A stretch of DNA of 64,000 bases from Haliotis rufescens (lineage: Eukaryota). Shown piece after piece: positions 1,361 through 61,370 of the stretch. The position numbers and the translations under genes are program-made. Within the stretch, counting starts at the first letter, position 1, and each line of letters opens with the position of its first letter. The stretch lies in NCBI RefSeq assembly GCF_023055435.1, contig NW_025964361.1, forward strand, positions 6,510,001 through 6,574,000, in the 5' to 3' direction. Below the pieces are notes generated by a model, which was given only the letters and a program-made list of their open reading frames with translations, was not told the DNA's origin and did not search any database.

Positions 1361-2345
1361 CTAAGAGAAGATCTTCCTAAAGAAGGCAGCCGCTCTCGTC
1401 AGCGCCTTTCTAAGGGGATGAATCTCTCTGTCATCCAAAAAGCTGTGGTCGTCCTCGTCCTCGTACACCCAGTAGTCACTGTCATCGTCGTCACTTGGGG
1501 CAGGATAGTAAGCGGCGTGGTTGATGGTGACGGGGGCGGGGAGCGTCTCACCGTAGACAGGGCGGGCCCAGAACGGAGTGAAAACGCTCAGGGGGTCGGG
1601 ACAACGGGAAGGGGACACAGCCAGGGAACGCTACACATCGAGGGGTGGAGGGAGGGACAAAGGAAGTCAAGTGAGACAGAAATACGGGATACTTTTGCAA
1701 AGAATACGACTCACACTTTATTATAGGGACTGGGCAGACTTAATGTGCAACAAATCAGCTATACTAGACGGAAGAATTTATAGGGTGGGCATGTAAAACT
1801 ACATACACAGTCGGACTCCTCATCCTGAGACGGCCACAAACTCACAGCCGCAGGAGTGCCATAATAGCGAATTATGTCCTCCCGAGCTGAAAAAGAAAAA
1901 CGAAAGCTAGCCTCAGTTAAATGTACGCCGACGGCTACGTTCAAAAAATCACAATTCATGACTTCTGACAGCTACAGTATGCCACTCGACCTCGGCCCTT
2001 TGACACCTCGAAGTCCAAGTGTATGTAGGGTTACGGGATGTGCTGCAAGACGACATTTAACCAATAAAATGGGCCAAACAGCTGCCTTTCACGGAATACG
2101 GGTTATCTTACATCTGTACAACATCGCCCGACACTATAATGTACGAACAGGTTTCATCTGAGAACCACATGTCAAGTTTACAATCTAACATTTCAAGTTA
2201 TGACAATTGCAAATGGCGGCCGCCATCTTCAGTCCCGATACTGCTGCCTAACAACGACCAATTTCACGTCTAATTTAGCATGTTAATACTGTTAAGTGGA
2301 ATAATTGTGATCTTAAATACCTTGAATGTGAAGCCTTGTATTCAT
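1361..2345 (-). CDS. Spliced 3-exon orphan gene, copy 1; 111 aa MNTRLHIQAREDIIRYYGTPAARSLAVSPSRCPDPLSVFTPFWARPVYGETLPAPVTINHAAYYPAPSDDDDSDYWVYEDEDDHSFLDDREIHPLRKALTRAAAFFRKIFS
   Basis: Exon 1 2345-2321 (ccaagATG...CAAG|gtattt, 25 nt, phase 1). Exon 2 1886-1846 (ctttcgtttttctttttcag|...GCT|gtgagt, 41 nt). Exon 3 1630-1361 (tttgtccctccctccacccctcgatgtgtag|CGT...TAG, 270 nt). 25+41+270=336 nt, open frame. No homology recognised. Confidence 0.85.
2211..2229. promoter_or_regulatory. YY1-type palindromic site in intron 1 (ATGGCGGCCGCCAT, contains NotI site), every unit
   Basis: Minus strand reads AAGATGGCGGC (YY1 consensus); 14-bp perfect palindrome at 2213-2226. Confidence 0.55.
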
Positions 2346-2600
2346 CTTGGAAGAAGACACACTTGGAATGATACAGCAGTGAGCGAAACGTAGAGGTCTG
2401 CGGAGCAAAAGCGATCGTTTTTCTGTTGAAAACAGAAGGGACGTCGATAACGGCAACGGTAACTACGTTACGGAGTTCGATGAGTCAGAACGAGGCTCAT
2501 CGCCAGCTTCCGGCGTGGTAAAGCCTAATGGCATTGCCAAGGGTGAAAACTGCCGGGTTTATTTCGTCTGAACACCGGTATTAAGTTGTATCTTACAACT
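2346..2600 (-). promoter_or_regulatory. Candidate 5'UTR and TATA-less CpG-rich promoter of the orphan gene (every unit)
   Basis: Inr-like TCATTC (2371-2366), GACGTC (2440-2445), AP-1-type TGAGTCA (2481-2487), ETS-type CCGGAAG (2513-2507) and locally high CpG. An in-frame TGA lies 51 nt upstream of the ATG in most copies (AGA in copies 1 and 7). The TSS is not established. Confidence 0.45.
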
Positions 2601-3047
2601 GAAACGTTGCCTACATCAGTTCAGAGTTTGAAAAAATTGTGCAGGTGAAACTGGGTGTTTTTCGTGCCTCCATTACCCGAAACAGGGTGAATTTTGTTCA
2701 CTATGAGATGGACATTAACCTTAAACGTTTGCTATGCCGAATAGTGATACCATATAACGACCCTCTATTATACTAGCCTTCACAATACCTTTTACATTCG
2801 ACAAACTGACACGGGCTAGCAGGCTAGTAAGAATGCAAATCTCTGATAATCCAAGTGGGATTTGGGAATTATTCCCAAGCCTACAGGGATAAAATAAAAG
2901 TTCAATGGTACTGGTATTTTCCAACGTGTGCAGCGACAGTTCTTATTTGGTTTGATTTCTAATCTGGAAACACGACGACCACAGAAAATAGCTAATAGGA
3001 GAGAAAGATAAATGACAAGCATATTGGTTTTTACTACACTAGGCCTG

Positions 3048-3348
3048 AGGGGCCGACCATTTCATGTTCCTTTGGAAGGGGGAGTGGGCGACGTTGGATT
3101 TTGTATGGAGACTAGATATTTTGCAGCTACAAATGCAAAATCAGTTAATATAAACTATGAGCCTAAATAAAACATTTTTCAAAAACCCACCTTGCAACAA
3201 CGTATTTTTGGTGGCCGACATGTTCTTTTTGTCCAACAGATGGAAGCATATTTAGTTTTCAATCAACTTTGGAGACAATATATTTTTTTCTGAAAAAAGC
3301 CTAGCCACCCACACACTCACAGTCAGAGAAATCCTATTGACCGTCCCA
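3048..3348. mobile_element. Possible degenerate MITE (~300 bp) in the spacer of every unit
   Basis: Left end AGGGGCCGACCATTTCATG followed by a G-rich run; right end a C-rich run then AAATCCTATTGACCGTCCC (reverse complement GGGACGGTCAATAGGATTT). Imperfect inverted termini, T/A-run-rich interior, no clear TSD. Confidence 0.4.
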
Positions 3349-3441
3349 TTTTGAAAACCTTGATGTGGACGTACAGGGGTAGAATTCAGACCCCTTGTAT
3401 CATTTAGGTATTTTTGTAGAATGCCAGATACGAATATTACG

Positions 3442-3443
<2 letters not shown>

Positions 3444-3519
<76 letters not shown>
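3444..3519. repeat. (TA)n microsatellite in the intergenic spacer; about 5-38 repeats depending on unit
   Basis: Long at 3444 and 48372, short at e.g. 26738 and 34200. Confidence 0.97.
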
Positions 3520-3522
<3 letters not shown>

Positions 3523-4659
3523 TCTACTCTTGCATACAAGTGGGTGTCAATATAGGCTTTCTACTTGCGCCTGGCCTCGGCCTATGTATAAAAGCATGCC
3601 CTCTGCAATTTCTGAAGACCACGGGCCAAAAGACCAGCAGTAAGGTGATGAGACGAGTGGAATCCAATATTGACTGAGGCGAAGGGAGATCACTCTCAAT
3701 CCCTTGTCCGACTACTGCTATTAGTTGGGTGAAGTGCTCGTAATATATCCCATGTGGCGACACTTGTGTTTTAGAGAAGAAAGGCAATTCTCGATTCGCA
3801 CTCCTTTATAAAGGAAGCCACAATTATTGTTACATTAGAAACGATTAGCTATTATATTGGAATATAAAATTTATTCCAGATAACAAAGTATCAGAGAGCT
3901 GTCCTCGGAGAATATCCCGTGTCACAATTGTCGCCACATATACATTTAGAAGTGTCTGATCTTAAGGTAACCCCACCTATTTAGAAATCTTCTGCTAAGT
4001 GCAGATCATGAAATTGGGACACAGCAGCACAGCAATATAGAGGCAGCATTCACTTTTTAACAATATCCATATGAATTTATGTCTCATGTTCGGAAATCTT
4101 GGGATTTGGCCAATATTGCGATGCTGCTGTCGCCCATATATTATTAGCTGTAAGGAAGAAACACTGTAGAGAAAACAGACGACTTGTGTATACATTACAG
4201 AAACATTTATTCAGATGACCGAAAGTCGAAAGTAATATGCCTCAAGGGAGATCCAAAAACGGGCCAAAATTGTATAGAAAGTATGGTCTTGTGCCATGCT
4301 AATAAGCCAAGAGGTTTGCCGAAAGGAAACTGAAAGTTGGGCCAAAACTGTGAGCCTAAAAATACGCCAAAAATACGCTAAGAGCGGGTATATGGAATGG
4401 TAGTCTCTCTCTCTCTCTCTCTCACTCTCTCTCTCTCTCTCTCTCTCATTCATGTATGCTCGTTCATTCACTCTAACCCTCACCTCTAACATACATCCAC
4501 TCTCCCTCTCACACATACAAACATACATACACACATTATTATACATACATGCTCATTCACTCTCTCACACTCACACACAAATACACACACATACATGCAT
4601 ACAGACAGACAGACAGACATGCCGATTCAATCTTTCATTTACTCTCACACACGCACACA

Positions 4660-4694
<35 letters not shown>

Positions 4695-4910
4695 TACATA
4701 TTCATTCAGTCTCTCTTTCTCACACACTTATACATACACACACATGCATGTTCATTCAAACTTATATTTACTCTCACACAAACGCACACATACATACATA
4801 CATACATACATACATACATACATACATACATACATACATACATACATACATACACACCTCCTCATTTTTCACTCACTTGCACACATTCAGACATTAAAAG
4901 GATAAGGAGT

Positions 4911-5895
4911 CTAAGAGAAGATCTTCCTGAAGAAGGCAGCCGCTCTCGTCAGCGCCTTTCTAAGGGGATGAATCTCTCTGTCATCCAAAAAGCTGTGGTC
5001 GTCCTCGTCCTCGTACACCCAGTAGTCACTGTCATCGTCGTCACTTGGGGCAGGGTAGTAAGCGGCGTGGTTGATGGTGACGGGGGCGGGGAGCGTCTCA
5101 CCGTAGACAGGGCGGGCCCAGAACGGAGTGAAAACGCTCAGGGGGTCGGGACAACGGGAAGGGGACACAGCCAGGGAACGCTACACATCGAGGGGTGGAG
5201 GGAGGGACAAAGGAAGTCAAGTGAGACAGAAATACGGGATACTTTTGCAAAGAAAACGACTCACACTTTATTATAGGGACTGGGCAGACTTAATGTGCAA
5301 CAAATCAGCTATACTAGACGGAAGAATTTATAGGGTGGGCATGTAAAACTACATACACAGTCGGACTCCTCATCCTGAGACGGCCACAAACTCACAGCCG
5401 CAGGAGTGCCATAATAGCGAATTATGTTCTCCCGAGCTGAAAAAGAAAAACGAAAGCTAGCCTCAGTTAAATGTACGCCGACGGCTACGTTCAAAAAATC
5501 ACAATTCATGACTTCTGACAGCTACAGTATGCCACTCGACCTCGGCCCTTTGACACCTCGAAGTCCAAGTGTATGTAGGGTTACGGGATGTGCTGCAAGA
5601 CGACATTTAACCAATAAAATGGGCCAAACAGCTGCCTTTCACGGAATACGGGTTATCTTACATCTGTACAACATCGCCCGACACTATAATGTACGAACAG
5701 GTTTCATCTGAGAACCACATGTCAAGTTTACAATCTAACATTTCCAGTTATGACAATTGCAAATGGCGGCCGCCATCTTCAGTCCCGATACTGCTGCCTA
5801 ACAACGACCAATTTCACGTCTAATTTAGCATGTTAATACTGTTAAGTGGAATAATTGTGATCTTAAATACCTTGAATGTGAAGCCTTGTATTCAT
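4911..5895 (-). CDS. Orphan 3-exon gene, copy 2 (N12, L87; two synonymous changes in exon 3)
   Basis: Same exon structure and splice sites as copy 1; frame intact. Confidence 0.85.
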
Positions 5896-7897
5896 CTTGG
5901 AAGAAGACACACTTGGAATGATACAGCAGTGAGCGAAACGTAGAGGTCAGCGGAGCAAAAGCGATCGTTTTTCTGTTGAAAACAGAAGGGACGTCGATAA
6001 CGGCAACGGTAACTACGTTACGGAGTTCGATGAGTCAGAACGAGGCTCATCGCCAGCTTCCGGCGTGGTAAAGCCTAATGGCATTGCCAAGGGTGAAAAC
6101 TGCCGGGTTTATTTCGTCTGAACACCGGTATTAAGTTGTATCTTACAACTGAAACGTTGCCTACATCAGTTCAGAGTTTGAAAAAATTGTGCAGGTGAAA
6201 CTGGGTGTTTTTCGTGCCTCCATTACCCGAAACAGGGTGAATTTTGTTCACTATGAGATGGACATTAACCTTAAACGTTTGCTATGCCGAATAGCGATAC
6301 CATATAACGACCCTCTATTATACTAGCCTTCACAATACCTTTTACATTCGACAAACTGACACGGGCTAGCAGGCTAGTAAGAATGCAAATCTCTGATAAT
6401 CCAAGTGGGATTTGGGAATTATTCCCAAGCCTACAGGGATAAAATAAAAGTTCAATGGTACTGGTATTTTCCAACGTGTGCAGCGACAGTTCTTATTTGG
6501 TTTGATTTCTAATCTGGAAACACGACGACAAAAGAAAATAGCTAATAGGAGAGAAAGATAAATGACAAGCATATTGGTTTTTACTACACTAGGCCTGAGG
6601 GGCCGACCATTTCATGTTCCTTTGGAAGGGGGAGTGGGCGACGTTGGATTTTGTATGGAGACTAGATATTTTTCAGCTACAAATGCAAAATCAGTTAATA
6701 TAAACTATGAGCCTAAATAAAACATTTTTCAAAAACCCACCTTGCAACAACGTATTTTTGGTGGCCGACATGTTCTTTTTGTCCAACAGATGGAAGCATA
6801 TTTAGTTTTCAATCAACTTTGGAGACAATATATTTTTTTCTGAAAAAATCCTAGCCACCCACACACTCACAGTCAGAGAAATCCTATTGACCGTCCCATT
6901 TTGAAAACCTTGATGTGGACGTACAGGGGTAGAATTCAGACCCCTTGTATCATTTAGGTATTTTTGTAGAATGCCAGATACGAATATTACGTCATATATA
7001 TATATATATATATATTAATCTACTCTTGCATACAAGTGGGTGTCAATATAGGCTTTCTACTTGCGCCTGGCCTCGGCCTATGTATAAAAGCATGCCCTCT
7101 GCAATTTCTGAAGACCACGGGCCAAAAGACCAGCAGTAAGGTGATAAGACGAGTGGAATCCAATATTGACTGAGGCGAAGGGAGATCACTCTCAATCCCT
7201 TGTCCGACTACTGCTATTAGTTGGGTGAAGTGCTCGTAATATATCCCATGTGGCGACACTTGTGTTTTAGAGAAGAAAGGCAATTCTCGATTCGCACTCC
7301 TTTATAAAGGAAGCCACAATTATTGTTACATTAGAAACGATTAGCTATTATATTGGAATATAAAATTTATTCCAGATAACAAAGTATCAGAGAGCTGTCC
7401 TCGGAGAATATCCCGTGTCACAATTGTCGCCACATAAACATTTAGAAGTGTCTGATCTTAAGGTAACCCCACCTATTTAGAAATCTTCTGCTAAGTGCAG
7501 ATCATGAAATTGGGACACAGCAGCACAGCAATATAGAGGCAGCATTCACTTTTTAACAATATCCATATGAATTTATGTCTCATGTTCGGAAATCTTGGGA
7601 TTTGGCCAATATTGCGATGCTGCTGTCGCCCATATATTATTAGCTGTAAGGAAGAAACACTGTAGAGAAAACAGACGACTTGTGTATACATTACAGAAAC
7701 ATTTATTCAGATGACCGAAAGTCGAAAGTAATATGCCTCAAGGGAGATCCAAAAAAGGGCCAAAATTGTATAGAAAGTATGGTCTTGTGCCATGCTAATA
7801 AGCCAAGAGGTTTGCCGAAAGGAAACTGAAAGTTGGGCCAAAACTGTGAGTCTAAAAATACGCCAAAAATACGCTAAGAGCGGGTATATGGAATGGT

Positions 7898-7960
<63 letters not shown>

Positions 7961-8461
7961 CATGTATGCTCGTTCATTCACTCTAACCCTCACCTCTAAC
8001 ATACATACACTCTCCCTCTCACACATACAAACATACATACACACATTATTATACATACATGCTCATTCACTCTCTCACACTCACACACAAATACACACAC
8101 ATACATGCATACAGACAGACAGACAGACATGCCGATTCAATCTTTCATTTACTCTCACACACGCACACAATACACACACACACACACAAACATACATATT
8201 CATTCAGTCTCTCTTTCTCACACACTTATACATACACACACATGCATGTTCATTCAAACTTATATTNNNNNNNNNNNNNNNNNNNNNNNNNNNNNNNNNN
8301 NNNNNNNNNNNNNNNNNNNNNNNNNNNNNNNNNNNNNNNNNNNNNNNNNNNNNNNNNNNNNNNNNNNNNNNNNNNNNNNNNNNNNNNNNNNNNNNNNNNN
8401 NNNNNNNNNNNNNNNNNNNNNNCTCACTTGCACACATTCAGACATTAAAAGGATAAGGAGT

Positions 8462-9446
8462 CTAAGAGAAGATCTTCCTAAAGAAGGCAGCCGCTCTCGT
8501 CAGCGCCTTTCTAAGGGGATGAATCTCTCTGTCATCCACAAAGCTGTGGTCGTCCTCGTCCTCGTACACCCAGTAGTCACTGTCATCGTCGTCACTTGGG
8601 GCAGGATAGTAAGCGGCGTGGTTGATGGTGACGGGGGCGGGGAGCGTCTCACCGTAGACAGGGCGGGCCCAGAACGGAGTGAAAACGCTCAGGGGGTCGG
8701 GACAACGGGAAGGGGACACAGCCAGGGAACGCTACACATCGAGGGGTGGAGGGAGGGACAAAGGAAGTCAAGTGAGACAGAAATACGGGATACTTTTGCA
8801 AAGAAAACGAATCACACTTTATTATAGGGACTGGGCAGACTTAATATGCAACAAATCAGCTATACTAGACGGAAGAATTTATAGGGTGGGCATGTAAAAC
8901 TACATACACAGTCGGACTCCTCATCCTGAGACGGCCACAAACTCACAGCCGCAGGAGTGCCATAATAGCGAATTATGTCCTCCCGAGCTGAAAAAGAAAA
9001 ACGAAAGCTAGCCTCAGTTAAATGTACGCCGACGGCTACGTTCAAAAAATCACAATTCATGACTTCTGACAGCTACAGTATGCCACTCGACCTCGGCCCT
9101 TTGACACCTCGAAGTCCAAGTGTATGTAGGGTTACGGGCTGTGCTGCAAGACGACATTTAACCAATAAAATGGGCCAAACAGCTGCCTTTCACGGAATAC
9201 GGGTTATCTTACATCTGTACAACATCGCCCGACACTATGATGTACGAACAGGTTTCATCTGAGAACCACATGTCAAGTTTACAATCTAACATTTTCAGTT
9301 ATGACAATTGCAAATGGCGGCCGCCATCTTCAGTCCCGATACTGCTGCCTAACAACGACCAATTTCACGTCTAATTTAACATCTTAATACTGTTAAGTGG
9401 AATAATTGTGATCTTAAATACCTTGAATGTGAAGCCTTGTATTCAT
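8462..9446 (-). CDS. Orphan 3-exon gene, copy 3 (consensus protein, V87)
   Basis: Same exon structure and splice sites; frame intact. Confidence 0.85.
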
Positions 9447-11762
9447 CTTGGAAGAAGACACACTTGGAATGATACAGCAGTGAGCGAAACGTAGAGGTCA
9501 GCGGAGCAAAAGCGATCGTTTTTCTGTTGAAAACAGAAGGGACGTCGATAACGGCAACGGTAACTACGTTACGGAGTTCGATGAGTCAGAACGAGGCTCA
9601 TCGCCAGCTTCCGGCGTGGTAAAGCCTAATGGCATTGCCAAGGGTGAAAACTGCCGGGTTTATTTCGTCTGAACACCGGTATTAAGTTGTATCTTACAAC
9701 TGAAACGTTGCCTACATCAGTTCAGAGTTTGAAAAAATTGTGCAGGTGAAACTGGGTGTTTTTCGTGCCTCCATTACCCGAAACAGGGTGAATTTTGTTC
9801 ACTATGAGATGGACATTAACCTTAAACGTTTGCTATGCCGAATAGCGATACCATATAACGACCCTCTATTATACTAGCCTTCACAATACCTTTTACATTC
9901 GACAAACTGACACGGGCTAGCAGGCTAGTAAGAATGCACATCTCTGATAATCCAAGTGGGATTTGGGAATTATTCCCAAGCCTACAGGGATAAAATAAAA
10001 GTTCAATGGTACTGGTATTTTCCAACGTGTGCAGCGACAGTTCTTATTTGGTTTGATTTCTAATCTGGAAACACGACGACCACAGAAAATAGCTAATAGG
10101 AGAGAAAGATAAATGACAAGCATATTGGTTTTTACTACACTAGGCCTGAGGGGCCGACCATTTCATGTTCCTTTGGAAGGGGGAGTGGGCGACGTTGGAT
10201 TTTGTATGGAGACTAGATATTTTGCAGCTACAAATGCAAAATCAGTTAATATAAACTATGAGCCTAAATAAAACATTTTTCAAAAACCCACCTTGCAACA
10301 ACGTATTTTTGGTGGCCGACATGTTCTTTTTGTCCAACAGATGGAAGCATATTTAGTTTTCAATCAACTTTGGAGACAATATATTTTTTTCTGAAAAAAT
10401 CCTAGCCACCCACACACTCACAGTCAGAGAAATCCTATTGACCGTCCCATTTTGAAAACCTTGATGTGGACGTACAGGGGTAGAATTCAGACCCCTTGTA
10501 TCATTTAGGTATTTTTGTAGAATGCCAGATACGAATATTACGTCATATATATATATATATATATATATATTAATCTACTCTTGCATACAAGTGGGTGTCA
10601 ATATAGGCTTTCTACTTGCGCCTGGCCTCGGCCTATGTATAAAAGCATGCCCTCTGCAATTTCTGAAGACCACGGGCCAAAAGACCAGCAGTGAGGTGAT
10701 AAGACGAGTGGAATCCAATATTGACTGAGGCGAAGGGAGATCACTCTCATCCCTTGTCCGACTACTGCTATTAGTTGGGTGAAGTGCTCGTAATATATCC
10801 CATGTGGCGACACTTGTGTTTTAGAGAAGAAAGGCAATTCTCGATTCGCACTCCTTTATAAAGGAAGCCACAATTATTGTTACATTAGAAACGATTAGCT
10901 ATTATATTGGAATATAAAATTTACTCCAGATAACAAGGTATCAGAGAGCTGTCCTCGGAGAATATCCCGTGTCACAATTGTCGCCACATAAACATTTAGA
11001 AGTGTCTGATCTTAAGGTAACCCCACCTATTTAGAAATCTTCTGCTAAGTGCAGATCATGAAATTGGGACACAGCAGCACAGCAATATAGAGGCAGCATT
11101 CACTTTTTAACAATATCCATATGAATTTATGTCTCATGTTCGGAAATCTTGGGATTTGGCCAATATTGCGATGCTGCTGTCGCCCATATATTATTAGCTG
11201 TAAGGAAGAAACACTGTAGAGAAAACAGACGACTTGTGTATACATTACAGAAACATTTATTCAGATGACCGAAAGTCGAAAGTAATATGCCTCAAGGGAG
11301 ATCCAAAAACGGGCCAAAATTGTATAGAAAGTATGGTCTTGTGCCATGCTAATAAGCCAAGAGGTTTGCCGAAAGGAAGCTGAAAGTTGGGCCAAAACTG
11401 TGAGCCTAAAAATACGCCCAAAATACGCTAAGAGCNNNNNNNNNNNNNNNNNNNNNNNNNNNNNNNNNNNNNNNNNNNNNNNNNNNNNNNNNNNNNNNNN
11501 NNNNNNNNNNNNNNNNNNNNNNNNNNNNNNNNNNNNNNNNNNNNNNNNNNNNNNNNNNNNNNNNNNNNTCACTCTAACCCTCACCTCTAACATACATCCA
11601 CTCTCCCTCTCACACATACAAACATACATACACACATTATTATACATACATGCTCATTCACTCTCTCACACTCACACACAAATACACACACATACATGCA
11701 TACAGACAGACAGACAGACATGCCGATTCAATCTTTCATTTACTCTCACACACGCACACAAT

Positions 11763-11793
<31 letters not shown>

Positions 11794-12055
11794 TACATAT
11801 TCATTCAGTCTCTCTTTCTCACACACTTATACATACACACACATGCATGTTCATTCAAACTTATATTNNNNNNNNNNNNNNNNNNNNNNNNNNNNNNNNN
11901 NNNNNNNNNNNNNNNNNNNNNNNNNNNNNNNNNNNNNNNNNNNNNNNNNNNNNNNNNNNNNNNNNNNNNNNNNNNNNNNNNNNNNNNNNNNNNNNNNNNN
12001 NNNNNNNNNNNCTCACTTGCACACATTCAGACATTATATTAAAAGGATAAGGAGT

Positions 12056-48369: not shown

Positions 48370-48426
<57 letters not shown>

Positions 48427-49304: not shown

Positions 49305-49363
<59 letters not shown>

Positions 49364-49818: not shown

Positions 49819-50802
49819 CTAAGAGAAGATCTTCCTAAAGAAGGCAGCCGCTCTCGTCAGCGCCTTTCTAAGGGGATGAATCTCTCTGTCATCCACAAAG
49901 CTGTGGTCGTCCTCGTCCTCGTACACCCAGTAGTCACTGTCATCGTCGTCACTTGGGGCAGGATAGTAAGCGGCGTGGTTGATGGTGACGGGGGCGGGGA
50001 GCGTCTCACCGTAGACAGGGCGGGCCCAGAACGGAGTGAAAACGCTCAGGGGGTCGGGACAACGGGAAGGGGACACAGCCAGGGAACGCTACACATCGAG
50101 GGGTGGAGGGAGGGACAAAGGAAGTCAAGTGAGACAGAAATACGGGATACTTTTGCAAAGAAAACGAATCACACTTTATTATAGGGACTGGGCAGACTTA
50201 ATGTGCAACAAATCAGCTATACTAGACGGAAGAATTTATAGGGTGGGCATGTAAAACTACATACACAGTCGGACTCCTCATCCTGAGACGGCCACAAACT
50301 CACAGCCGCAGGAGTGCCATAATAGCGAATTATGTCCTCCTGAGCTGAAAAAGAAAAACGAAAGCTAGCCTCAGTTAAATGTACGCCGACGGCTACGTTC
50401 AAAAAATCACAATTCATGACTTCTGACAGCTACAGTATGCCACTCGACCTCGGCCCTTTGACACCTCGAAGTCCAAGTGTATGTAGGGTTACGGGCTGTA
50501 CTGCAAGACAACATTTAACCAATAAAATGGGCCAAACAGCTGCCTTTCACGGAATACGGGTTATCTTACATCTGTACCACACGCCCGACACTATAATGTA
50601 CGAACAGGTTTCATCTGAGAACCACATGTCAAGTTTACAATCTAACATTTTCAGTTATGACAATTGCAAATGGCGGCCGCCATCTTCAGTCCCGATACTG
50701 CTGCCTAACAACGACCAATTTCACGTCTAATTTAGCATGTTAATACTGTTAAGTGGAATAATTGTGATCTTAAATACCTTGAATGTGAAGCCTTGTATTC
50801 AT
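49819..50802 (-). CDS. Orphan 3-exon gene, copy 14 (R10Q)
   Basis: Same structure; a 1-nt deletion at ~50580 lies in intron 1. Confidence 0.85.
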
Positions 50803-52797
50803 CTTGGAAGAAGACACACTTGGAATGATACAGCAGTGAGCGAAACGTAGAGGTCAGCGGAGCAAAAGCGATCGTTTTTCTGTTGAAAACAGAAGGGACG
50901 TCGATAACGGCAACGGTAACTACGTTACGGAGTTCGATGAGTCAGAACGAGGCTCATCGCCAGCTTCCGGCGTGGTAAAGCCTAATGGCATTGCCAAGGG
51001 TGAAAACTGCCGGGTTTATTTCGTCTGAACACCGGTATTAAGTTGTATCTTACAACTGAAACGTTGCCTACATCAGTTCAGAGTTTGAAAAAATTGTGCA
51101 GGTGAAACTGGGTGTTTTTTGTGCCTCCATTACCCGAAACAGGGTGAATTTTGTTCACTATGAGATGGACATTAACCTTAAACGTTTGCTATGCCGAATA
51201 GCGATACCATATAACGACCCTCTATTATACTAGCCTTCACAATACCTTTTACATTCGACAAACTGACACGGGCTAGCAGGCTAGTAAGAATGCACATCTC
51301 TGATAATCCAAGTGGGATTTGGGAATTATTCCCAAGCCTACAGGGATAAAATAAAAGTTCAATGGTACTGGTATTTTCCAACGTGTGCAGCGACAGTTCT
51401 TATTTGGTTTGATTTCTAATCTGGAAACACGACGACCACAGAAAATAGCTAATAGGAGAGAAAGATAAATGACAAGCATATTGGTTTTTACTACACTAGG
51501 CCTGAGGGGCCGACCATTTCATGTTCCTTTGGAAGGGGGAGTGGGCGACGTTGGATTTTGTATGGAGACTAGATATTTTGCAGCTACAAATGCAAAATCA
51601 GTTAATATAAACTATGAGCCTAAATAAAACATTTTTCAAAAACCCACCTTGCAACAACGTATTTTTGGTGGCCGACATGTTCTTTTTGTCCAACAGATGG
51701 AAGCATATTTAGTTTTCAATCAACTTTGGAGACAATATATTTTTTTCTGAAAAAATCCTAGCCACCCACACACTCACAGTCAGAGAAATCCTATTGACCG
51801 TCCCATTTTGAAAACCTTGATGTGGACGTACAGGGGTAGAATTCAGACCCCTTGTATCATTTAGGTATTTTTGTAGAATGCCAGATACGAATATTACGTC
51901 ATATATATATATATATTAATCTACTCTTGCATACAAGTGGGTGTCAATATAGGCTTTCTACTTGCGCCTGGCCTCGGCCTATGTATAAAAGCATGCCCTC
52001 TGCAATTTCTGAAGACCACGGGCCAAAAGACCAGCAGTAAGGTGATAAGAAGAGTGGAATCCAATATTGACTGAGGCGAAGGGAGATCACTCCCATCCCT
52101 TGTCCGACTACTGCTATTAGTTGGGTGAAGTGCTCGTAATATATCCCATGTGGCGACACTTGTGTTTTAGAGAAGAAAGGCAATTCTCGATTCGCACTCC
52201 TTTATAAAGGAAGCCACAATTATTGTTACATTAGAAACGATTAGCTATTATATTGGAATATAAAATTTATTCCAGATAACAAAGTATCAGAGAGCTGTCC
52301 TCGGAGAATATCCCGTGTCACAATTGTCGCCACATAAACATTTAGAAGTGTCTGATCTTAAGGTAACCCCACCTATTTAGAAATCTTCTGCTAAGTGCAG
52401 ATCATGAAATTGGGACACAGCAGCACAGCAATATAGAGGCAGCATTCACTTTTTAACAATATCCATATGAATTTATGTCTCATGTTCGGAAATCTTGGGA
52501 TTTGGCCAATATTGCGATGCTGCTGTCGCCCATATATTATTAGCTGTAAGGAAGAAACACTGTAGAGAAAACAAACGACTTGTGTATACATTACAGAAAC
52601 ATTTATTCAGATGACCGAAAGTCGAAAGTAATATGCCTCAAGGGAGATCCAAAAACGGGCCAAAATTGTATAGAAAGTATGGTCTTGTGCCATGCTAATA
52701 AGCCAAGAGGTTTGCCGAAAGGAAACTGAAAGTTGGGCCAAAACTGTGAGCCTAAAAATACGCCAAAAATACGCTAAGAGCGGGTATATGGAATGGT

Positions 52798-52861
<64 letters not shown>

Positions 52862-53316
52862 CATGTATGCTCGTTCATTCACTCTAACCCTCACCTCTAA
52901 CATACATCCACTCTCCCTCTCACACATACAAACATACATACACACATTATTATACATACATGCTCATTCACTCTCTCACACTCACACACAAATACACACA
53001 CATACATGCATACAGACAGACAGACAGACATGCCGATTCAATCTTTCATTTACTCTCACACACGCACACAATACACACACACACACACACACACAAACAT
53101 ACATATTCATTCAGTCTCTCTTTCTCACAAACTTATACATACACACACATGCATGTTCATTCAAACTTATATTTACTCTCACACAAACGCACACATACAT
53201 ACATACATACATACATACATACATACATACATACATACATACATACATACATACATACACACCTGCTCATTCATTCACTCACTTGCACACATTCAGACAT
53301 TAAAAGGATAAGGAGT

Positions 53317-54300
53317 CTAAGAGAAGATCTTCCTAAAGAAGGCAGCCGCTCTCGTCAGCGCCTTTCTAAGGGGATGAATCTCTCTGTCATCCACAAAGCT
53401 GTGGTCGTCCTCGTCCTCGTACACCCAGTAGTCACTGTCATCGTCGTCACTTGGGGCAGGATAGTAAGCGGCGTGGTTGATGGTGACGGGGGCGGGGAGC
53501 GTCTCACCGTAGACAGGGCGGGCCCAGAACGGAGTGAAAACGCTCAGGGGGTCGGGACAACGGGAAGGGGACACAGCCAGGGAACGCTACACATCGAGGG
53601 GTGGAGGGAGGGACAAAGGAAGTCAAGTGAGACAGAAATACGGGATACTTTTGCAAAGAAAACGAATCACACTTTATTATAGGGACTGGGCAGACTTAAT
53701 GTGCAACAAATCAGCTATACTAGACGGAAGAATTTATAGGGTGGGCATGTAAAACTACATACACAGTCGGACTCCTCATCCTGAGACGGCCACAAACTCA
53801 CAGCCGCAGGAGTGCCATAATAGCGAATTATGTCCTCCTGAGCTGAAAAAGAAAAACGAAAGCTAGCCTCAGTTAAATGTACGCCGACGGCTACGTTCAA
53901 AAAATCACAATTCATGACTTCTGACAGCTACAGTATGCCACTCGACCTCGGCCCTTTGACACCTCGAAGTCCAAGTGTATGTAGGGTTACGGGCTGTACT
54001 GCAAGACAACATTTAACCAATAAAATGGGCCAAACAGCTGCCTTTCACGGAATACGGGTTATCTTACATCTGTACCACACGCCCGACACTATAATGTACG
54101 AACAGGTTTCATCTGAGAACCACATGTCAAGTTTACAATCTAACATTTTCAGTTATGACAATTGCAAATGGCGGCCGCCATCTTCAGTCCCGATACTGCT
54201 GCCTAACAACGACCAATTTCACGTCTAATTTAGCATGTTAATACTGTTAAGTGGAATAATTGTGATCTTAAATACCTTGAATGTGAAGCCTTGTATTCAT
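53317..54300 (-). CDS. Orphan 3-exon gene, copy 15 (R10Q)
   Basis: Near-identical to copy 14 at offset 3498, including the intron 1 deletion. Confidence 0.85.
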
Positions 54301-56294
54301 CTTGGAAGAAGACACACTTGGAATGATACAGCAGTGAGCGAAACGTAGAGGTCAGCGGAGCAAAAGCGATCGTTTTTCTGTTGAAAACAGAAGGGACGTC
54401 GATAACGGCAACGGTAACTACGTTACGGAGTTCGATGAGTCAGAACGAGGCTCATCGCCAGCTTCCGGCGTGGTAAAGCCTAATGGCATTGCCAAGGGTG
54501 AAAACTGCCGGGTTTATTTCGTCTGAACACCGGTATTAAGTTGTATCTTACAACTGAAACGTTGCCTACATCAGTTCAGAGTTTGAAAAAATTGTGCAGG
54601 TGAAACTGGGTGTTTTTTGTGCCTCCATTACCCGAAACAGGGTGAATTTTGTTCACTATGAGATGGACATTAACCTTAAACGTTTGCTATGCCGAATAGC
54701 GATACCATATAACGACCCTCTATTATACTAGCCTTCACAATACCTTTTACATTCGACAAACTGACACGGGCTAGCAGGCTAGTAAGAATGCACATCTCTG
54801 ATAATCCAAGTGGGATTTGGGAATTATTCCCAAGCCTACAGGGATAAAATAAAAGTTCAATGGTACTGGTATTTTCCAACGTGTGCAGCGACAGTTCTTA
54901 TTTGGTTTGATTTCTAATCTGGAAACACGACGACCACAGAAAATAGCTAATAGGAGAGAAAGATAAATGACAAGCATATTGGTTTTTACTACACTAGGCC
55001 TGAGGGGCCGACCATTTCATGTTCCTTTGGAAGGGGGAGTGGGCGACGTTGGATTTTGTATGGAGACTAGATATTTTGCAGCTACAAATGCAAAATCAGT
55101 TAATATAAACTATGAGCCTAAATAAAACATTTTTCAAAAACCCACCTTGCAACAACGTATTTTTGGTGGCCGACATGTTCTTTTTGTCCAACAGATGGAA
55201 GCATATTTAGTTTTCAATCAACTTTGGAGACAATATATTTTTTTCTGAAAAAATCCTAGCCACCCACACACTCACAGTCAGAGAAATCCTATTGACCGTC
55301 CCATTTTGAAAACCTTGATGTGGACGTACAGGGGTAGAATTCAGACCCCTTGTATCATTTAGGTATTTTTGTAGAATGCCAGATACGAATATTACGTCAT
55401 ATATATATATATATTAATCTACTCTTGCATACAAGTGGGTGTCAATATAGGCTTTCTACTTGCGCCTGGCCTCGGCCTATGTATAAAAGCATGCCCTCTG
55501 CAATTTCTGAAGACCACGGGCCAAAAGACCAGCAGTGAGGTGATGAGACGAGTGGAATCCAATATTGACTGAGGCGAAGGGAGATCACTCTCAATCCCTT
55601 GTCCGACTACTGCTATTAGTTGGGTGAAGTGCTCGTAATATATCCCATGTGGCGACACTTGTGTTTTAGAGAAGAAAGGCAATTCTCGATTCGCACTCCT
55701 TTATAAAGGAAGCCACAATTATTGTTACATTAGAAACGATTAGCTATTATATTGGAATATAAAATTTATTCCAGATAACAAAGTATCAGAGAGCTGTCCT
55801 CGGAGAATATCCCGTGTCACAATTGTCGCCACATAAACATTTAGAAGTGTCTGATCTTAAGGTAACCCCACCTATTTAGAAATCTTCTGCTAAGTGCAGA
55901 TCATGAAATTGGGACACAGCAGCACAGCAGTATAGAGGCAGCATTCATTTTTTAACAATATCCATATGAATTTATGTCTCATGTTCGGAAATCTTGGGAT
56001 TTGGCCAATATTGCGATGCTGCTGTCGCCCATATATTATTAGCTGTAAGGAAGAAACACTGTAGAGAAAACAGACGACTTGTGTATACATTACAGAAACA
56101 TTTATTCAGATGACCGAAAGTCGAAAGTAATATGCCTCAAGGGAGATCCAAAAACGGGCCAAAATTGTATAGAAAGTATGGTCTTGTGCCATGCTAATAA
56201 GCCAAGAGGTTTGCCGAAAGGAAGCTGAAAGTTGGGCCAAAACTGTGAGCCTAAAAATACGCCAAAAATACGCTAAGAGCGGGTATATGGAATG

Positions 56295-56368
<74 letters not shown>

Positions 56369-56861
56369 TGTATGCTCGTTCATTCACTCTAACCCTCACC
56401 TCTAACATGCATCCACTCTCCCTCTCACACATACAAACATACATACACACATTATTATACATACATGCTCATTCACTCTCTCACACTCACACACAAATAC
56501 ACACACACACATGCATACAGACAGACAGACAGACATGCCGATTCAATCTTTCATTTACTCTCACACACGCACACAATACACACACACACACAAACACACA
56601 AACATACATATTCATTCAGTCTCTCTTTCTCACACACTTATACATACACACACATGCATGTTCATTCAAACTTATATTNNNNNNNNNNNNNNNNNNNNNN
56701 NNNNNNNNNNNNNNNNNNNNNNNNNNNNNNNNNNNNNNNNNNNNNNNNNNNNNNNNNNNNNNNNNNNNNNNNNNNNNNNNNNNNNNNNNNNNNNNNNNNN
56801 NNNNNNNNNNNNNNNNNNNNNNNTCACTTGCACACATTCAGACATTAAAAGGATAAGGAGT

Positions 56862-57846
56862 CTAAGAGAAGATCTTCCTAAAGAAGGCAGCCGCTCTCGT
56901 CAGCGCCTTTCTAAGGGGATGAATCTCTCTGTCATCCACAAAGCTGTGGTCGTCCTCGTCCTCGTACACCCAGTAGTCACTGTCATCGTCGTCACTTGGG
57001 GCAGGATAGTAAGCGGCGTGGTTGATGGTGACGGGGGCGGGGAGCGTCTCACCGTAGACAGGGCGGGCCCAGAACGGAGTGAAAACGCTCAGGGGGTCGG
57101 GACAACGGGAAGGGGACACAGCCAGGGAACGCTACACATCGAGGGGTGGAGGGAGGGACAAAGGAAGTCAAGTGAGACAGAAATACGGGATACTTTTGCA
57201 AAGAAAACGAATCACACTTTATTATAGGGACTGGGCAGACTTAATGTGCAACAAATCAGCTATACTAGACGGAAGAATTTATAGGGTGGGCATGTAAAAC
57301 TACATACACAGTCGGACTCCTCATCCTGAGACGGCCACAAACTCACAGCCGCAGGAGTGCCATAATAGCGAATTATGTCCTCCCGAGCTGAAAAAGAAAA
57401 ACGAAAGCTAGCCTCAGTTAAATGTACGCCGACGGCTACGTTCAAAAAATCACAATTCATGACTTCTGACAGCTACAGTATGCCACTCGACCTCGGCCCT
57501 TTGACACCTCGAAGTCCAAGTGTATGTAGGGTTACGGGCTGTACTGCAAGACAACATTTAACCAATAAAATGGGCCAAACAGCTGCCTTTCACGGAATAC
57601 GGGTTATCTTACATCTGTACAACATCGCCCGACACTATAATGTACGAACAGGTTTCATCTGAGAACCACATGTCAAGTTTACAATCTAACATTTTCAGTT
57701 ATGACAATTGCAAATGGCGGCCGCCATCTTCAGTCCCGATAATGCTGCCTAACAACGACCAATTTCACGTCTAATTTAGCATGTTAATACTGTTAAGTGG
57801 AATAATTGTGATCTTAAATACCTTGAATGTGAAGCCTTGTATTCAT
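56862..57846 (-). CDS. Orphan 3-exon gene, copy 16
   Basis: Same exon structure; frame intact. Confidence 0.85.
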
Positions 57847-59848
57847 CTTGGAAGAAGACACACTTGGAATGATACAGCAGTGAGCGAAACGTAGAGGTCA
57901 GCGGAGCAAAAGCGATCGTTTTTCTGTTGAAAACAGAAGGGACGTCGATAACGGCAACGGTAACTACGTTACGGAGTTCGATGAGTCAGAACGAGGCTCA
58001 TCGCCAGCTTCCGGCGTGGTAAAGCCTAATGGCATTGCCAAGGGTGAAAACTGCCGGGTTTATTTCGTCTGAACACCGGTATTAAGTTGTATCTTACAAC
58101 TGAAACGTTGCCTACATCAGTTCAGAGTTTGAAAAAATTGTGCAGGTGAAACTGGGTGTTTTTTGTGCCTCCATTACCCGAAACAGGGTGAATTTTGTTC
58201 ACTATGAGATGGACATTAACCTTAAACGTTTGCTATGCCGAATAGCGATACCATATAACGACCCTCTATTATACTAGCCTTCACAATACCTTTTACATTC
58301 GACAAACTGACACGGGCTAGCAGGCTAGTAAGAATGCACATCTCTGATAATCCAAGTGGGATTTGGGAATTATTCCCAAGCCTACAGGGATAAAATAAAA
58401 GTTCAATGGTACTGGTATTTTCCAACGTGTGCAGCGACAGTTCTTATTTGGTTTGATTTCTAATCTGGAAACACGACGACCACAGAAAATAGCTAATAGG
58501 AGAGAAAGATAAATGACAAGCATATTGGTTTTTACTACACTAGGCCTGAGGGGCCGACCATTTCATGTTCCTTTGGAAGGGGGAGTGGGCGACGTTGGAT
58601 TTTGTATGGAGACTAGATATTTTGCAGCTACAAATGCAAAATCAGTTAATATAAACTATGAGCCTAAATAAAACATTTTTCAAAAACCCACCTTGCAACA
58701 ACGTATTTTTGGTGGCCGACATGTTCTTTTTGTCCAACAGACGGAAGCATGTTTAGTTTTCAATCAACTTTGGAGACAATATATTTTTTTCTGAAAAAAT
58801 CCTAGCCACCCACACACTCACAGTCAGAGAAATCCTATTGACCGTCCCATTTTGAAAACCTTGATGTGGACGTACAGGGGTAGAATTCAGACCCCTTGTA
58901 TCATTTAGGTATTTTTGTAGAATGCCAGATACGAATATTACGTCATATATATATATATATTAATCTACTCTTGCATACAAGTGGGTGTCAATATAGGCTA
59001 TCTACTTGCGCCTGGCCTCGGCCTATGTATAAAAGCATGCCCTCTGCAATTTCTGAAGACCACGGGCCAAAAGACCAGCAGTGAGGTGATGAGACGAGTG
59101 GAATCCAATATTGACTGAGGCGAAGGGAGATCACTCTCAATCCCTTGTCCGACTACTGCTATTAGTTGGGTGAAGTGCTCGTAATATATCCCATGTGGCG
59201 ACACATGTGTTTTAGAGAAGAAAGGCAATTCTCGATTCGCACTCCTTTATAAAGGAAGCCACAAATATTGTTACATTAGAAACGATTAGCTATTATATTG
59301 GAATATAAAATTTATTCCAGATAACAAAGTATCAGAGAGCTGTCCTCGGAGAATATCCCGTGTCACAATTGTCGCCACATAAACATTTAGAAGTGTCTGA
59401 TCTTAAGGTAACCCCACCTATTTAGAAATCTTCTGCTAAGTGCAGATCATGAAATTGGGACACAGCAGCACAGCAGCACAGCAATATAGAGGCAGCATTC
59501 ACTTTTTAACAATATCCATATGAATTTATGTCTCATGTTCGGAAATCTTGGGATTTGGCCAATATTGCGATGCTGCTGTCGCCCATATATTATTAGCTGT
59601 AAGGAAGAAACACTGTAGAGAAAACAGACGACTTGTGTATACATTACAGAAACATTTATTCAGATGACCGAAAGTCGAAAGTAATATGCCTCAAGGGAGA
59701 TCCAAAAACGGGCCAAAATTGTATAGAAAGTATGGTCTTGTGCCATGCTAATAAGCCAAGAGGTTTGCCGAAAGGAAGCTGAAAGTTGGGCCAAAACTGT
59801 GAGCCTAAAAATACGCCAAAAATACGCTAAGAGCGGGTATATGGAATG

Positions 59849-59915
<67 letters not shown>

Positions 59916-60385
59916 CTGTATGCTCGTTCATTCACTCTAACCCTCACCTCTAACATGCATCCACTCTCCCTCTCACACATACAAACATACATACACACAT
60001 TATTATACATACATGCTCATTCACTCTCTCACACTCACACACAAATACACACACATACATGCATACAGACAGACAGACAGACATGCCGATTCAATCTTTC
60101 ATTTACTCTCACACACGCACACAATACACACACACACACACACACACAAACATACATATTCATTCAGTCTCTCTTTCTCACACACTTATACATACACACA
60201 CATGCATGTTCATTCAAACTTATATTTACTCTCACACAAACGCACACATACATACATACATACATACATACATACATACATACATACATACATACATACA
60301 TACATACATACATACATACATACATACACACCTGCTCATTCATTCACTCACTTGCACACATTCAGACATTAAAAGGATAAGGAGT

Positions 60386-61370
60386 CTAAGAGAAGATCTT
60401 CCTAAAGAAGGCAGCCGCTCTCGTCAGCGCCTTTCTAAGGGGATGAATCTCTCTGTCATCCACAAAGCTGTGGTCGTCCTCGTCCTCGTACACCCAGTAG
60501 TCACTGTCATCGTCGTCACTTGGGGCAGGATAGTAAGCGGCGTGGTTGATGGTGACGGGGGCGGGGAGCGTCTCACCGTAGACAGGGCGGGCCCAGAACG
60601 GAGTGAAAACGCTCAGGGGGTCGGGACAACGGGAAGGGGACACAGCCAGGGAACGCTACACATCGAGGGGTGGAGGGAGGGACAAAGGAAGTCAAGTGAG
60701 ACAGAAATACGGGATACTTTTGCAAAGAAAACGAATCACACTTTATTATAGGGACTGGGCAGACTTAATGTGCAACAAATCAGCTATACTAGACGGAAGA
60801 ATTTATAGGGTGGGCATGTAAAACTACATACACAGTCGGACTCCTCATCCTGAGACGGCCACAAACTCACAGCCGCAGGAGTGCCATAATAGCGAATTAT
60901 GTCCTCCCGAGCTGAAAAAGAAAAACGAAAGCTAGCCTCAGTTAAATGTACGCCGACGGCTACGTTCAAAAAATCACAATTCATGACTTCTGACAGCTAC
61001 AGTATGCCACTCGACCTCGGCCCTTTGACACCTCGAAGTCCAAGTGTATGTAGGGTTACGGGCTGTACTGCAAGTCAACATTTAACCAATAAAATGGGCC
61101 AAACAGCTGCCTTTCACGGAATACGGGTTATCTTACATCTGTACAACATCGCCCGACACTATAATGTACGAACAGGTTTCATCTGAGAACCACATGTCAA
61201 GTTTACAATCTAACATTTTCAGTTATGACAATTGCAAATGGCGGCCGCCATCTTCAGTCCCGATAATGCTGCCTAACAACGACCAATTTCACGTCTAATT
61301 TAGCATGTTAATACTGTTAAGTGGAATAATTGTGATCTTAAATACCTTGAATGTGAAGCCTTGTATTCAT
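60386..61370 (-). CDS. Orphan 3-exon gene, copy 17
   Basis: Same exon structure; frame intact. Confidence 0.85.

What the first reader, a model, noticed from the sequence alone, without database searches (positions are those of the whole stretch)
1361..61370. Hidden ampliconic gene array: each 3.5-kb unit encodes a spliced 111-aa orphan protein, with at least 17 intact copies
Seen: three minus-strand exons (25+41+270 nt) with canonical donors (gtattt, gtgagt), polypyrimidine acceptors and matching phases (1, then 0). They join an aagATG to the 85-aa ORF, whose listed start is only a GTG. A poly(A) signal lies downstream and promoter-like DNA upstream, so the repeat unit equals one transcription unit. 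Known: protein-coding macrosatellites such as D4Z4/DUX4 (3.3-kb unit) and Drosophila Stellate are often germline or early-embryo genes with dosage or conflict roles. Inference: this is an unrecognised, highly amplified gene family. I recognise no domain, and the analogy is architectural only.
Basis: partly seen in the sequence, partly recalled or inferred. Interest (0 to 1): 0.9.

Follow-up and report, generated by a model that had tools for sequence, protein, structure and literature searches.

The report
Abalone tandem array of orphan gene
The 3.5-kb repeat is a real, spliced, abalone-only gene copied about 300-400 times in the red abalone genome; NCBI already annotates it as an "uncharacterized protein", the product is 124 aa rather than 111 aa, and its function is unknown.

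Summary
The window (Haliotis rufescens, scaffold C583 6.51-6.574 Mb) holds 17 complete units and one cut unit of a 3.5-kb head-to-tail repeat. Each unit carries one three-exon gene on the minus strand.

exon 1, intron 1 and exon 3 are right. RNA-derived contigs from four runs carry the exon 1|exon 2 junction.
- **The error:** It is absent from every copy of the larger sister subfamily. The downstream donor TGT|GTATGT is invariant, and the 13 extra codons stay in frame in H. asinina too. The product is therefore 124 aa. On that model 16 of 17 window copies are intact.
- **Coding evidence:** between diverged arrays only the promoter/exon 1, exon 2 and exon 3 remain alignable. Exon 3 dN/dS is 0.11-0.24, against 1.2-1.7 for the antisense frame.
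- **Size and range:** at least 308 copies lie on seven scaffolds. The family was found only in Haliotis.
- **Not hidden:** RefSeq already models these genes in three species as "uncharacterized protein". I found no paper on them.
- **Product:** an acidic, disordered protein ending in a basic amphipathic helix. Function is unknown; amplification for dosage is my best guess.

No splice junction for intron 2 was seen in the RNA contigs. The scan had not reported this family on other DNA.

The parts
1..64000 (-). Middle part of a tandem array of 3.5-kb gene-bearing units: 17 complete genes and 1 cut by the window end. The whole array spans at least C583:6,497,308-6,619,706, with at least 34 copies.
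50803..50971 (-). Representative unit 14: promoter/5' region conserved between subfamilies at 73-77%. It has no TATA box. Conserved GCCGGAA (ETS-like), GATGACGCC (CRE-like half-site) and GTAACGTAGTTAC blocks are motif readings from memory. The transcription start site was not determined.
50778..50802 (-). Unit 14, coding part of exon 1 (25 nt, ATG 50802-50800, donor GTATTT at 50777). Same exon in the other copies: 2321-2345, 5871-5895, 9422-9446, 13016-13040, 16577-16601, 20133-20157, 25615-25639, 29346-29370, 33077-33101, 36821-36845, 40409-40433, 43731-43755, 47249-47273, 54276-54300, 57822-57846, 61346-61370.
   Evidence: RNA joint
50345..50777 (-). Unit 14, intron 1 (433 nt, GT..AG). It is removed in RNA contigs of four runs.
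   Evidence: joint 50344|50778 in X1, X2, X7; loose ends in X3
50265..50344 (-). Unit 14, exon 2 (80 nt, phase 1 to 0). Other copies: 1807-1886, 5357-5436, 8908-8987, 12502-12581, 16063-16142, 19612-19698 (87 nt, frameshifted), 25101-25180, 28832-28911, 32563-32642, 36307-36386, 39895-39974, 43217-43296, 46735-46814, 53763-53842, 57308-57387, 60832-60911.
   Evidence: protein models
50089..50264 (-). Unit 14, intron 2 (176 nt, GTATGT...GTGTAG). Removal is inferred, because no junction contig was listed. Contigs that keep this intron exist in all four runs.
   Evidence: depth falls about 10-20 fold in X2; records 1, 10, 17, 25 keep it
49819..50088 (-). Unit 14, exon 3 (270 nt including the stop at 49819-49821; 89 codons). 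Other copies: 1361-1630, 4911-5180, 8462-8731, 12056-12325, 15617-15886, 19166-19435, 24655-24924, 28386-28655, 32117-32386, 35856-36131 (+6 nt, in frame), 39449-39718, 42771-43040, 46289-46558, 53317-53586, 56862-57131, 60386-60655; cut copy 63896-64000.
49100..49818 (-). Unit 14, 3' flank and putative 3' UTR: about 70 nt conserved between subfamilies, then (TATG)n, (TG)n and (GA)n microsatellites, with AATAAA about 705 nt after the stop. In other units the N runs sit in these microsatellites.
22273..24263 (.). 2-kb dispersed repeat (transposable element) inserted in the spacer of unit 6. The same unit has the frameshifted exon 2.

Best explanation
The window is part of one of at least seven tandem arrays of a genuine protein-coding gene family found only in Haliotis.

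How each unit works: every 3.5-kb unit is its own transcription unit. A conserved promoter without a TATA box drives a three-exon pre-mRNA (25 + 80 + 270 coding nt). The mRNA encodes a 124-aa protein with no signal peptide. The protein is acidic (pI about 4.8) and largely disordered. It has conserved FTPFWARP and SDYWVYEDEDD motifs, a patch of net charge -11, and a +5 amphipathic C-terminal helix.

How the arrays are kept: units within an array stay 98-100% alike, presumably through unequal crossing-over or gene conversion, perhaps helped by the microsatellites that bound each unit (inferred). Between arrays everything except the promoter and the exons has diverged beyond alignment.

Shown here: gene structure, splicing of intron 1, purifying selection on the reading frame, copy number, restriction to the genus, and existing RefSeq annotation.

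Inferred: removal of intron 2. Also inferred is that amplification serves bulk production of the protein (dosage), as in histone-type arrays, rather than an arms race.

Guess: the C-terminal helix docks on a membrane or a partner protein, and the acidic-aromatic patch binds a basic partner or cations.
For: - Array and per-unit gene.
- Intron 1 junction in RNA contigs of 4 runs from 4 studies.
- 100% match to RefSeq protein models of 124 and 140 aa, with orthologues in H. cracherodii and H. asinina (76-90% identity).
- Only three conserved islands per unit between subfamilies, and they are the promoter/exon 1, exon 2 and exon 3.
- Splice sites conserved (GT-AG at both introns in 48 of 49 genes) and 48 of 49 genes intact.
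- Exon 3 dN/dS is 0.24 (type A vs B) and 0.11 (within B), against 1.18 and 1.68 for the antisense frame; differences by codon position are 96/138/256.
- 308 exact motif hits against 0 in the control, on C1, C101, C112, C146, C223, C379 and C583.
- Exons are 98% identical between the two C583 arrays, but the spacer only 92%.
- Disordered protein with one helix at residues 107-123, plus charge and hydrophobic-moment figures.
- No relative outside Haliotis among 1.84 billion representatives, Pfam, PDB or the Atlas.
Against: - No contig with the intron 2 junction was listed. Contigs that splice intron 1 but keep intron 2 exist (X1 record 1, X7 record 25). That form would stop after about 50 codons.
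- The runs are only guessed to be RNA, and they cover spacers at low depth.
- Tissue, stage and protein-level expression are unknown.
- Nothing tested here speaks to dosage as the reason for amplification beyond purifying selection, spread over several scaffolds and conservation across the genus.
- The transcription start and poly(A) site were not mapped.
Confidence: 0.8

Rival explanations
1. The reader's 111-aa product (exon 2 ending at GCT|GTGAGT, window 50304) is the main isoform of the window-type genes.
For: In this subfamily a 3-nt insertion creates a strong consensus donor, G|GTGAGT, that is in frame (39 nt shorter); it is present in all 17 window copies. On this model unit 6 would also be intact. 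One search showed no junction for either donor, so it cannot decide between them.
Against: The donor is absent from all type-B arrays. The H. asinina proteins keep the segment (A-SLWPSLDEESDC). The 13 codons remain in frame and conserved. DNA conservation runs on to 50254-50258. None of the 26 + 13 database models is 111 aa.
Confidence: 0.07
2. An ampliconic conflict gene: the copies were amplified by an arms race in the germline (meiotic drive and its suppression, or gamete competition), as with Stellate/Su(Ste) or Sly/Slx, and not for ordinary dosage.
For: Hundreds of copies of a young, lineage-restricted gene in homogenised arrays. Two diverged subfamilies coexist. The promoter blocks resemble CRE and MYB sites; this is a lead from memory only.
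Against: Selection on the protein is purifying, not diversifying (dN/dS 0.11-0.24). The family is kept at 76-90% amino-acid identity in three species. The arrays lie on at least 7 scaffolds and are not confined to one chromosome. No tissue data are available.
Confidence: 0.13
3. Mostly non-productive transcription: the arrays are transcribed, but most RNA keeps intron 2 (early stop, nonsense-mediated decay, or a non-coding or small-RNA role), and little or no 124-aa protein is made today.
For: Contigs that keep intron 2 while splicing intron 1 occur in X1 and X7, and contigs that keep intron 2 occur in all four runs. No intron 2 junction was listed, and the spacers are also covered.
Against: The summed depth of exon 2 and exon 3 contigs is about 10-20 times that of intron 2 in X2 and 4-7 times in X3. 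The exon 3 frame is open in 51 of 51 copies and in 149 of 150 scored genome-wide, with dN/dS well below 1. That pattern needs translation. RefSeq models in three species splice intron 2.
Confidence: 0.08
4. A gene-less satellite or transposon-derived repeat whose ORF is open by chance.
For: The repeat is microsatellite-rich, there is no Pfam domain, and the codon-aligned antisense frame is also open.
Against: Exon-only conservation between arrays with different spacers and unit lengths of 3.5-5.7 kb. Spliced RNA. Frame-specific constraint. No transposon domain and no terminal repeats. The one true transposon in the window is a separate insertion.
Confidence: 0.02

Closest known systems
RefSeq 'uncharacterized protein LOC125376031/35/41/49/87...' of Haliotis rufescens (e.g. 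XP_048243243.1, XP_048243245.1), with models in H. cracherodii (XP_0710876xx) and H. asinina (XP_0676850xx)
   Same: This is the same gene family. The window's exon 3 is 100% identical to the 140-aa model P0001, which the window itself encodes. The exon structure is the same as in the 124-aa models.
   Different: Nothing differs.
Protein-coding macrosatellites and ampliconic gene arrays (human D4Z4/DUX4, TSPY, CT47; Drosophila Stellate/Su(Ste); mouse Sly/Slx)
   Same: Kilobase-scale head-to-tail units, each holding a complete gene. Units are homogenised within an array. The families are lineage-restricted.
   Different: There is no sequence or domain relationship: no homeobox and no CK2-beta. 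Copy number is much higher (at least 308), on at least 7 scaffolds. The protein is under purifying selection. Sex-chromosome or germline linkage was not shown.
Dosage arrays of housekeeping products (sea-urchin early histone repeats, 5S rDNA; from general knowledge)
   Same: Hundreds of near-identical tandem units with their own promoters, conserved across a genus, coding sequence under constraint, spacers free to diverge.
   Different: The product is an orphan disordered protein of unknown role. The genes have two introns. Several arrays have diverged into two subfamilies.

Membership tests
Haliotis RefSeq 'uncharacterized protein LOC1253760xx' family | Near-identical protein sequence and the same three-exon structure | tested here: met
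   Exon 3 is 100% identical to P0001, and the 124-aa models equal exons 1 + 2 (80 nt) + 3.
Protein-coding macrosatellite / tandem gene array (architectural class) | Head-to-tail units of at least 1 kb, each with a complete promoter-to-terminator gene | tested here: met
   17 units of 3.5 kb, each with a conserved promoter block, 3 exons and a downstream AATAAA.
Protein-coding macrosatellite / tandem gene array (architectural class) | The gene is expressed and spliced | tested here: inconclusive
   The intron 1 junction is in contigs of 4 runs. The intron 2 junction was not displayed. The runs are only guessed to be RNA.
D4Z4/DUX4 | Double homeobox ORF in each unit | tested here: not met
   No Pfam hit at E <= 10 apart from noise.
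Stellate/Su(Ste) | Homology to the casein kinase 2 beta subunit | tested here: not met
   No Pfam or PDB match.
Stellate/Su(Ste) | Germline-restricted expression and sex-chromosome linkage | not testable with these tools
   Run metadata are coded, and no sex-specific read depth is available.
Transposable-element ORF | Transposase, reverse transcriptase or integrase domain, terminal repeats, dispersed copies | tested here: not met
   No domain. Every copy located lies in a tandem array. Spacers are not conserved between arrays.
Histone-type dosage array | Histone fold or another known bulk product | tested here: not met
   No domain; the AlphaFold model is disordered, mean pLDDT 55.

The most novel reading that the evidence does not exclude
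The family is an undescribed genus-specific system: hundreds of copies of a charge-polarised disordered protein, needed in bulk at one life stage (oocyte, sperm or early embryo). Copy number and the A/B subfamily balance would differ between abalone species and so contribute to reproductive isolation or transmission distortion.
Probability: 0.15. Interest if true: 0.8.

Novelty: new member of a known kind. Interest (0 to 1): 0.5.

Why it matters
About 1.1-1.6 Mb of the red abalone genome (at least 308 units of 3.5-5.7 kb) is given over to one small gene. The gene has no relatives outside the genus, yet its reading frame is held under purifying selection and it is shared by abalone lineages as far apart as H. 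asinina. Orphan families of this size are rare, and they are usually filtered out as repeats or left as "uncharacterized" entries. Knowing where and when this protein is made could reveal an abalone-specific cell-biological or reproductive function. That is relevant to a genus which is both farmed and endangered. For annotation, the case also shows that a plausible sequence-only gene model can be wrong by one donor site, and that comparing paralogous arrays settles the question.

Tried and rejected
**Searches that found nothing**
- Rfam and tRNA scans of the unit gave only sub-threshold mir-297 hits in the (TG/TATG)n tracts, which I take as low-complexity noise. No tRNA was found.
- Pfam on every sizeable ORF of the unit, both strands, found nothing real.
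- The PDB profile search gave only spectrin SH3 at E 0.29, which I take as noise.
- The ESM Atlas gave a best score of 0.78, below the chance level stated by the tool.
- AlphaFold2 gave mean pLDDT 55, so I ran no fold search.
- Five paper searches (LOC identifiers, peptide motifs, abalone satellite/tandem/ampliconic terms) found nothing on this family.
- The one transcriptome paper I checked has no supplement held.

**Ideas rejected**
- The plus-strand ORFs (95 aa; 240-379 aa, antisense to exon 3) are not genes. The antisense frame has dN/dS above 1, and the spliced RNA defines the minus strand.

**Steps that could not be run**
I therefore computed no cross-species dN/dS and used paralogous arrays instead.
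The intactness census rests on 49 genes.
- Read laying allows one call, so I could not re-examine intron 2 or lay the raw miRNA-seq runs.

**Joined model**
I searched exon 3 by reference and used the database's own full-length records (P0009, P0022 and others).

Full report
**1. Where the window comes from**

The genome search places the window at G000:C583:6,510,001-6,574,000, in a genome of 1,334,454,214 bp in 615 contigs. That size equals the red abalone primary assembly xgHalRufe1.0.p (1,334,471,355 bp) minus its 17,141-bp mitochondrion. The largest scaffold, 94,228,061 bp, also matches (PMC9709998). The proteins that match the window are RefSeq records of Haliotis rufescens on a contig of 59,995,430 bp, which is the length of C583.

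**2. Checking the observation**

The repeat finder shows 17 in-register units at 98-100% identity. Their spacing is 3.50-3.74 kb, with one 5.48-kb unit. The ORF listing finds the 85-aa minus-strand GTG-ORF in every unit.

I read unit 14 base by base and then located the three proposed exons in every unit. All 17 units share these features:
- the start context aagATG and a 25-nt first coding exon;
- the donor GTATTT and the acceptor TTTCAG;
- a 270-nt last exon behind GTGTAG. In unit 10 it is 276 nt, an in-frame +6.

An 18th copy is cut by the window end.

The 12 N runs were tested first, as asked. Ten lie 38-44 nt 3' of a stop codon, where N-free units carry (TATG)n. Two lie in the (GA)n tract. 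In each case both flanks map collinearly to an N-free unit, and no exon or intron is touched. I did not fill them.

**3. The gene is real**

*(a) RNA.* I laid contigs of four runs, from four organisms and four studies, on window 49790-52600. The runs are only guessed to be RNA. The joint 50344|50778 skips 433 nt and reads CT..AC on the plus strand, which is GT..AG on the minus strand. It occurs in X1, X2 (two contigs) and X7, and both sides appear as loose ends in X3.

*(b) Paralogue comparison.* The genome holds many more arrays, and they fall into two subfamilies.

| | Type A | Type B |
|---|---|---|
| N-terminus | MNTRLHIQ (the window's type) | MFTRLHIQ |
| Unit length | 3.5 kb | 4.3-5.7 kb |
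| Scaffolds | C583, C1 | C146, C112, C223, C379 (C101 unassigned) |
| Exon 3 identity to H. asinina proteins | 76% | 85-90% |

When a type-A unit is aligned to 11 type-B units, exactly three islands survive:
- window 50971-50660, the promoter plus exon 1 (about 74% identity);
- window 50358-50254, exon 2 (about 82%);
- window 50122 to about 49740, exon 3 plus about 70 nt of 3' flank (about 79%).

Both introns and the roughly 2.2-kb spacer cannot be aligned.

*(c) Constraint.* Exon 3 dN/dS is 0.24 between A and B and 0.11 within B. Differences fall 96/138/256 on codon positions 1/2/3. As a control, the equally open codon-aligned antisense frame gives 1.18 and 1.68.

*(d) Intactness.* Of the 49 complete genes I held, 48 have open exons in the right phases, and 48 have GT-AG at both introns. 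All 51 complete exon 3 copies are open. Of the 150 exon 3 matches scored genome-wide, one has an internal stop.

**4.

That GT exists only in type A. Every type-B copy reads GCTGCGAGT, three bases shorter. The site 39 nt downstream, TGT|GTATGT (exon end at 50265), is invariant in all arrays.

The 13 extra codons (VSLWPSQDEESDC) stay in frame, and H. asinina conserves them as -SLWPSLDEESDC. DNA conservation also runs to 50254-50258 and not only to 50304.

The database models are 124 aa. There are also 140- and 145-aa forms that start inside intron 1, and one 130-aa stop-codon variant. None is 111 aa. Both versions are in phase, so sequence alone could not have told them apart.

On the 124-aa model, unit 6 is broken by a 7-nt insertion in exon 2. 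That gives 16 of 17 intact copies.

**5. An honest gap: intron 2**

One search listed no contig joining exon 2 to exon 3 by either donor. Contigs that keep intron 2 exist in all four runs. Two of them (X1 record 1, X7 record 25) are spliced at intron 1 yet run unbroken from exon 2 to exon 3. That form would terminate after about 50 codons.

Three things point to removal of intron 2:
- Summed contig depth falls from 2272-5560 in the exon 2 and core exon 3 bins to 155-271 in intron 2 in X2. In X3 it falls from about 4100-4800 to 656-1235.
- Both splice sites are invariant across copies.
- The exon 3 frame is under a constraint that requires translation.

RefSeq also splices intron 2 in three species. 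It is my general knowledge, not a result tested here, that Gnomon issues multiple isoforms only with transcript support. Only part of the contig pieces were displayed, and short junction unitigs are easily lost. I rate removal of intron 2 as likely (about 0.8), not as shown.

**6. Size and range of the family**

- A degenerate pattern for the FTPFWARP codons hits 308 places, against 0 for the reversed control. The listed hits are on C1, C101 and C112; the scored matches add C146, C223, C379 and C583.
- First-look candidate counts were 379 (exon 3 DNA) and 783 (protein, exons 2 and 3 counted separately). My estimate is therefore about 300-400 copies, or 1.1-1.6 Mb.
- The window's own array spans at least 6,497,308-6,619,706 and has at least 34 copies.
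- A second type-A array at 4.65-4.73 Mb on the same scaffold is 98% identical in exon 3 but only 92% in the spacer.

Outside Haliotis I found nothing:
- An HMM of ten family members, run against 1.84 billion cluster representatives, returned only Haliotis entries plus one weak hit. That hit is a repeat protein from a public sequencing run (P0030, E 1e-9 summed over nine short stretches).
- The word-indexed search found only the two Haliotis clusters.
- Pfam, PDB and the Atlas gave noise.

**7. The product**

The protein is 124 aa, with pI 4.8 and no N-terminal hydrophobic stretch, so I see no signal peptide (from reading the sequence). AlphaFold2 with the family alignment gives mean pLDDT 55 and a single helix at residues 107-123.

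Residues 81-105 carry net charge -11 (SDDDDSDYWVYEDEDD...). The last 19 residues carry +5, with a hydrophobic moment of 0.63-0.80. This agrees with the scan's separate note on that helix (s1-807795).

Invariant blocks across A, B and H. asinina are FTPFWARP, ETLPAPVTI, SDYWVYEDED and the helix.

**8. How it most likely works**

Each unit is an autonomous gene. The conserved 170-nt upstream block has no TATA box. It carries GCCGGAA, GATGACGCC and GTAACGTAGTTAC motifs. Calling these ETS-, CRE- or MYB-like rests on memory and is a lead only.

Identity of 98-100% within an array, against about 80% between subfamilies in exons only, is the signature of concerted evolution by unequal exchange. Every unit is bounded by long (TATG)n, (TG)n and (GA)n tracts, and type B also has (TG)n directly after the stop codon. 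These tracts may promote that exchange; this is an inference.

Several features look more like a dosage array than an arms-race amplicon:
- purifying selection on the protein;
- presence in three species;
- spread over at least seven scaffolds.

That is my committed reading, at about 0.5 among the functional options. A germline-conflict role (about 0.15) and largely non-productive transcription (about 0.1) remain open. What the protein binds is unknown.

**9. Novelty**

The "hidden, unrecognised" claim fails. The window's genes are already RefSeq models, and orthologous families are annotated in two more species. However, the records are nameless, and five literature searches found no description.

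I file this as a new, still undescribed member of a known kind: gene-bearing tandem arrays of a taxon-restricted gene. It is of moderate interest because of its scale and its clear selective constraint.

**10. Limits**

- Read laying and the look-up of sequencing runs allow one call each, and run metadata are coded. So tissue, strand-specific ends and intron 2 usage could not be settled.
- I did not search the joined spliced model as typed letters. I used exon 3 by reference and the database's own protein records.

Noticed in passing
window 22273-24263 (unit 6): A roughly 2-kb dispersed repeat is inserted in the spacer, which makes this unit 5.48 kb long. Copies at 98-99% identity lie on C583 (52.69 Mb), C112 and C445, with a 96% copy on C579 and many older fragments elsewhere, so this is a recently active transposable element. 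The same unit has the frameshifted exon 2, so this is a decaying copy.
   Followed up: partly
window 27825-28206, 31556-31937, 35274-35668: An internal 193-203-nt duplication lies within the microsatellite-rich 3' flank of units 8-10. It explains their longer period (3731-3744 bp) and marks a sub-block of the array that was copied as a group.
   Followed up: no
P0029 (XP_071118469.1, H. cracherodii, 655 aa): This RefSeq model strings nine type-B exon 3 segments from consecutive units into one 'protein'. It is either an annotation artefact of the array or evidence of read-through transcripts spliced between units.
   Followed up: no
Type-B arrays, e.g. L021-L033 (C146, C112, C223, C379): No protein of about 123 aa from H. 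rufescens type-B genes turned up in the protein collections. Only type-A and H. asinina clusters did. The larger subfamily may therefore be unannotated or mis-joined in the red abalone annotation.
   Followed up: partly
P0030 (SRR5271169_4455004, 622 aa): A protein assembled from a public sequencing run, with nine 69-aa repeats that each carry NPLENFTPFWTFP. This resembles the family's PDPLSVFTPFWARP motif (E 1e-9 summed over nine stretches). It could be a distant relative from another organism or a chance match; its origin is unknown.
   Followed up: partly
window 46164-46232, 49638-49714, 53136-53212, 42606-42682 (minus strand): Sub-threshold Rfam mir-297 matches (35-43 bits against a gathering score of 90) lie in the (TG)/(TATG) tracts. 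This is a low-complexity artefact.
   Followed up: yes
window plus strand, e.g. 57375-57662 and 49462-50184: Recurrent plus-strand ORFs (95 aa; 240-379 aa) lie antisense to the gene. The long ones exist because the codon-aligned antisense frame of exon 3 has no stops. That frame has dN/dS above 1, so they are not genes.
   Followed up: yes
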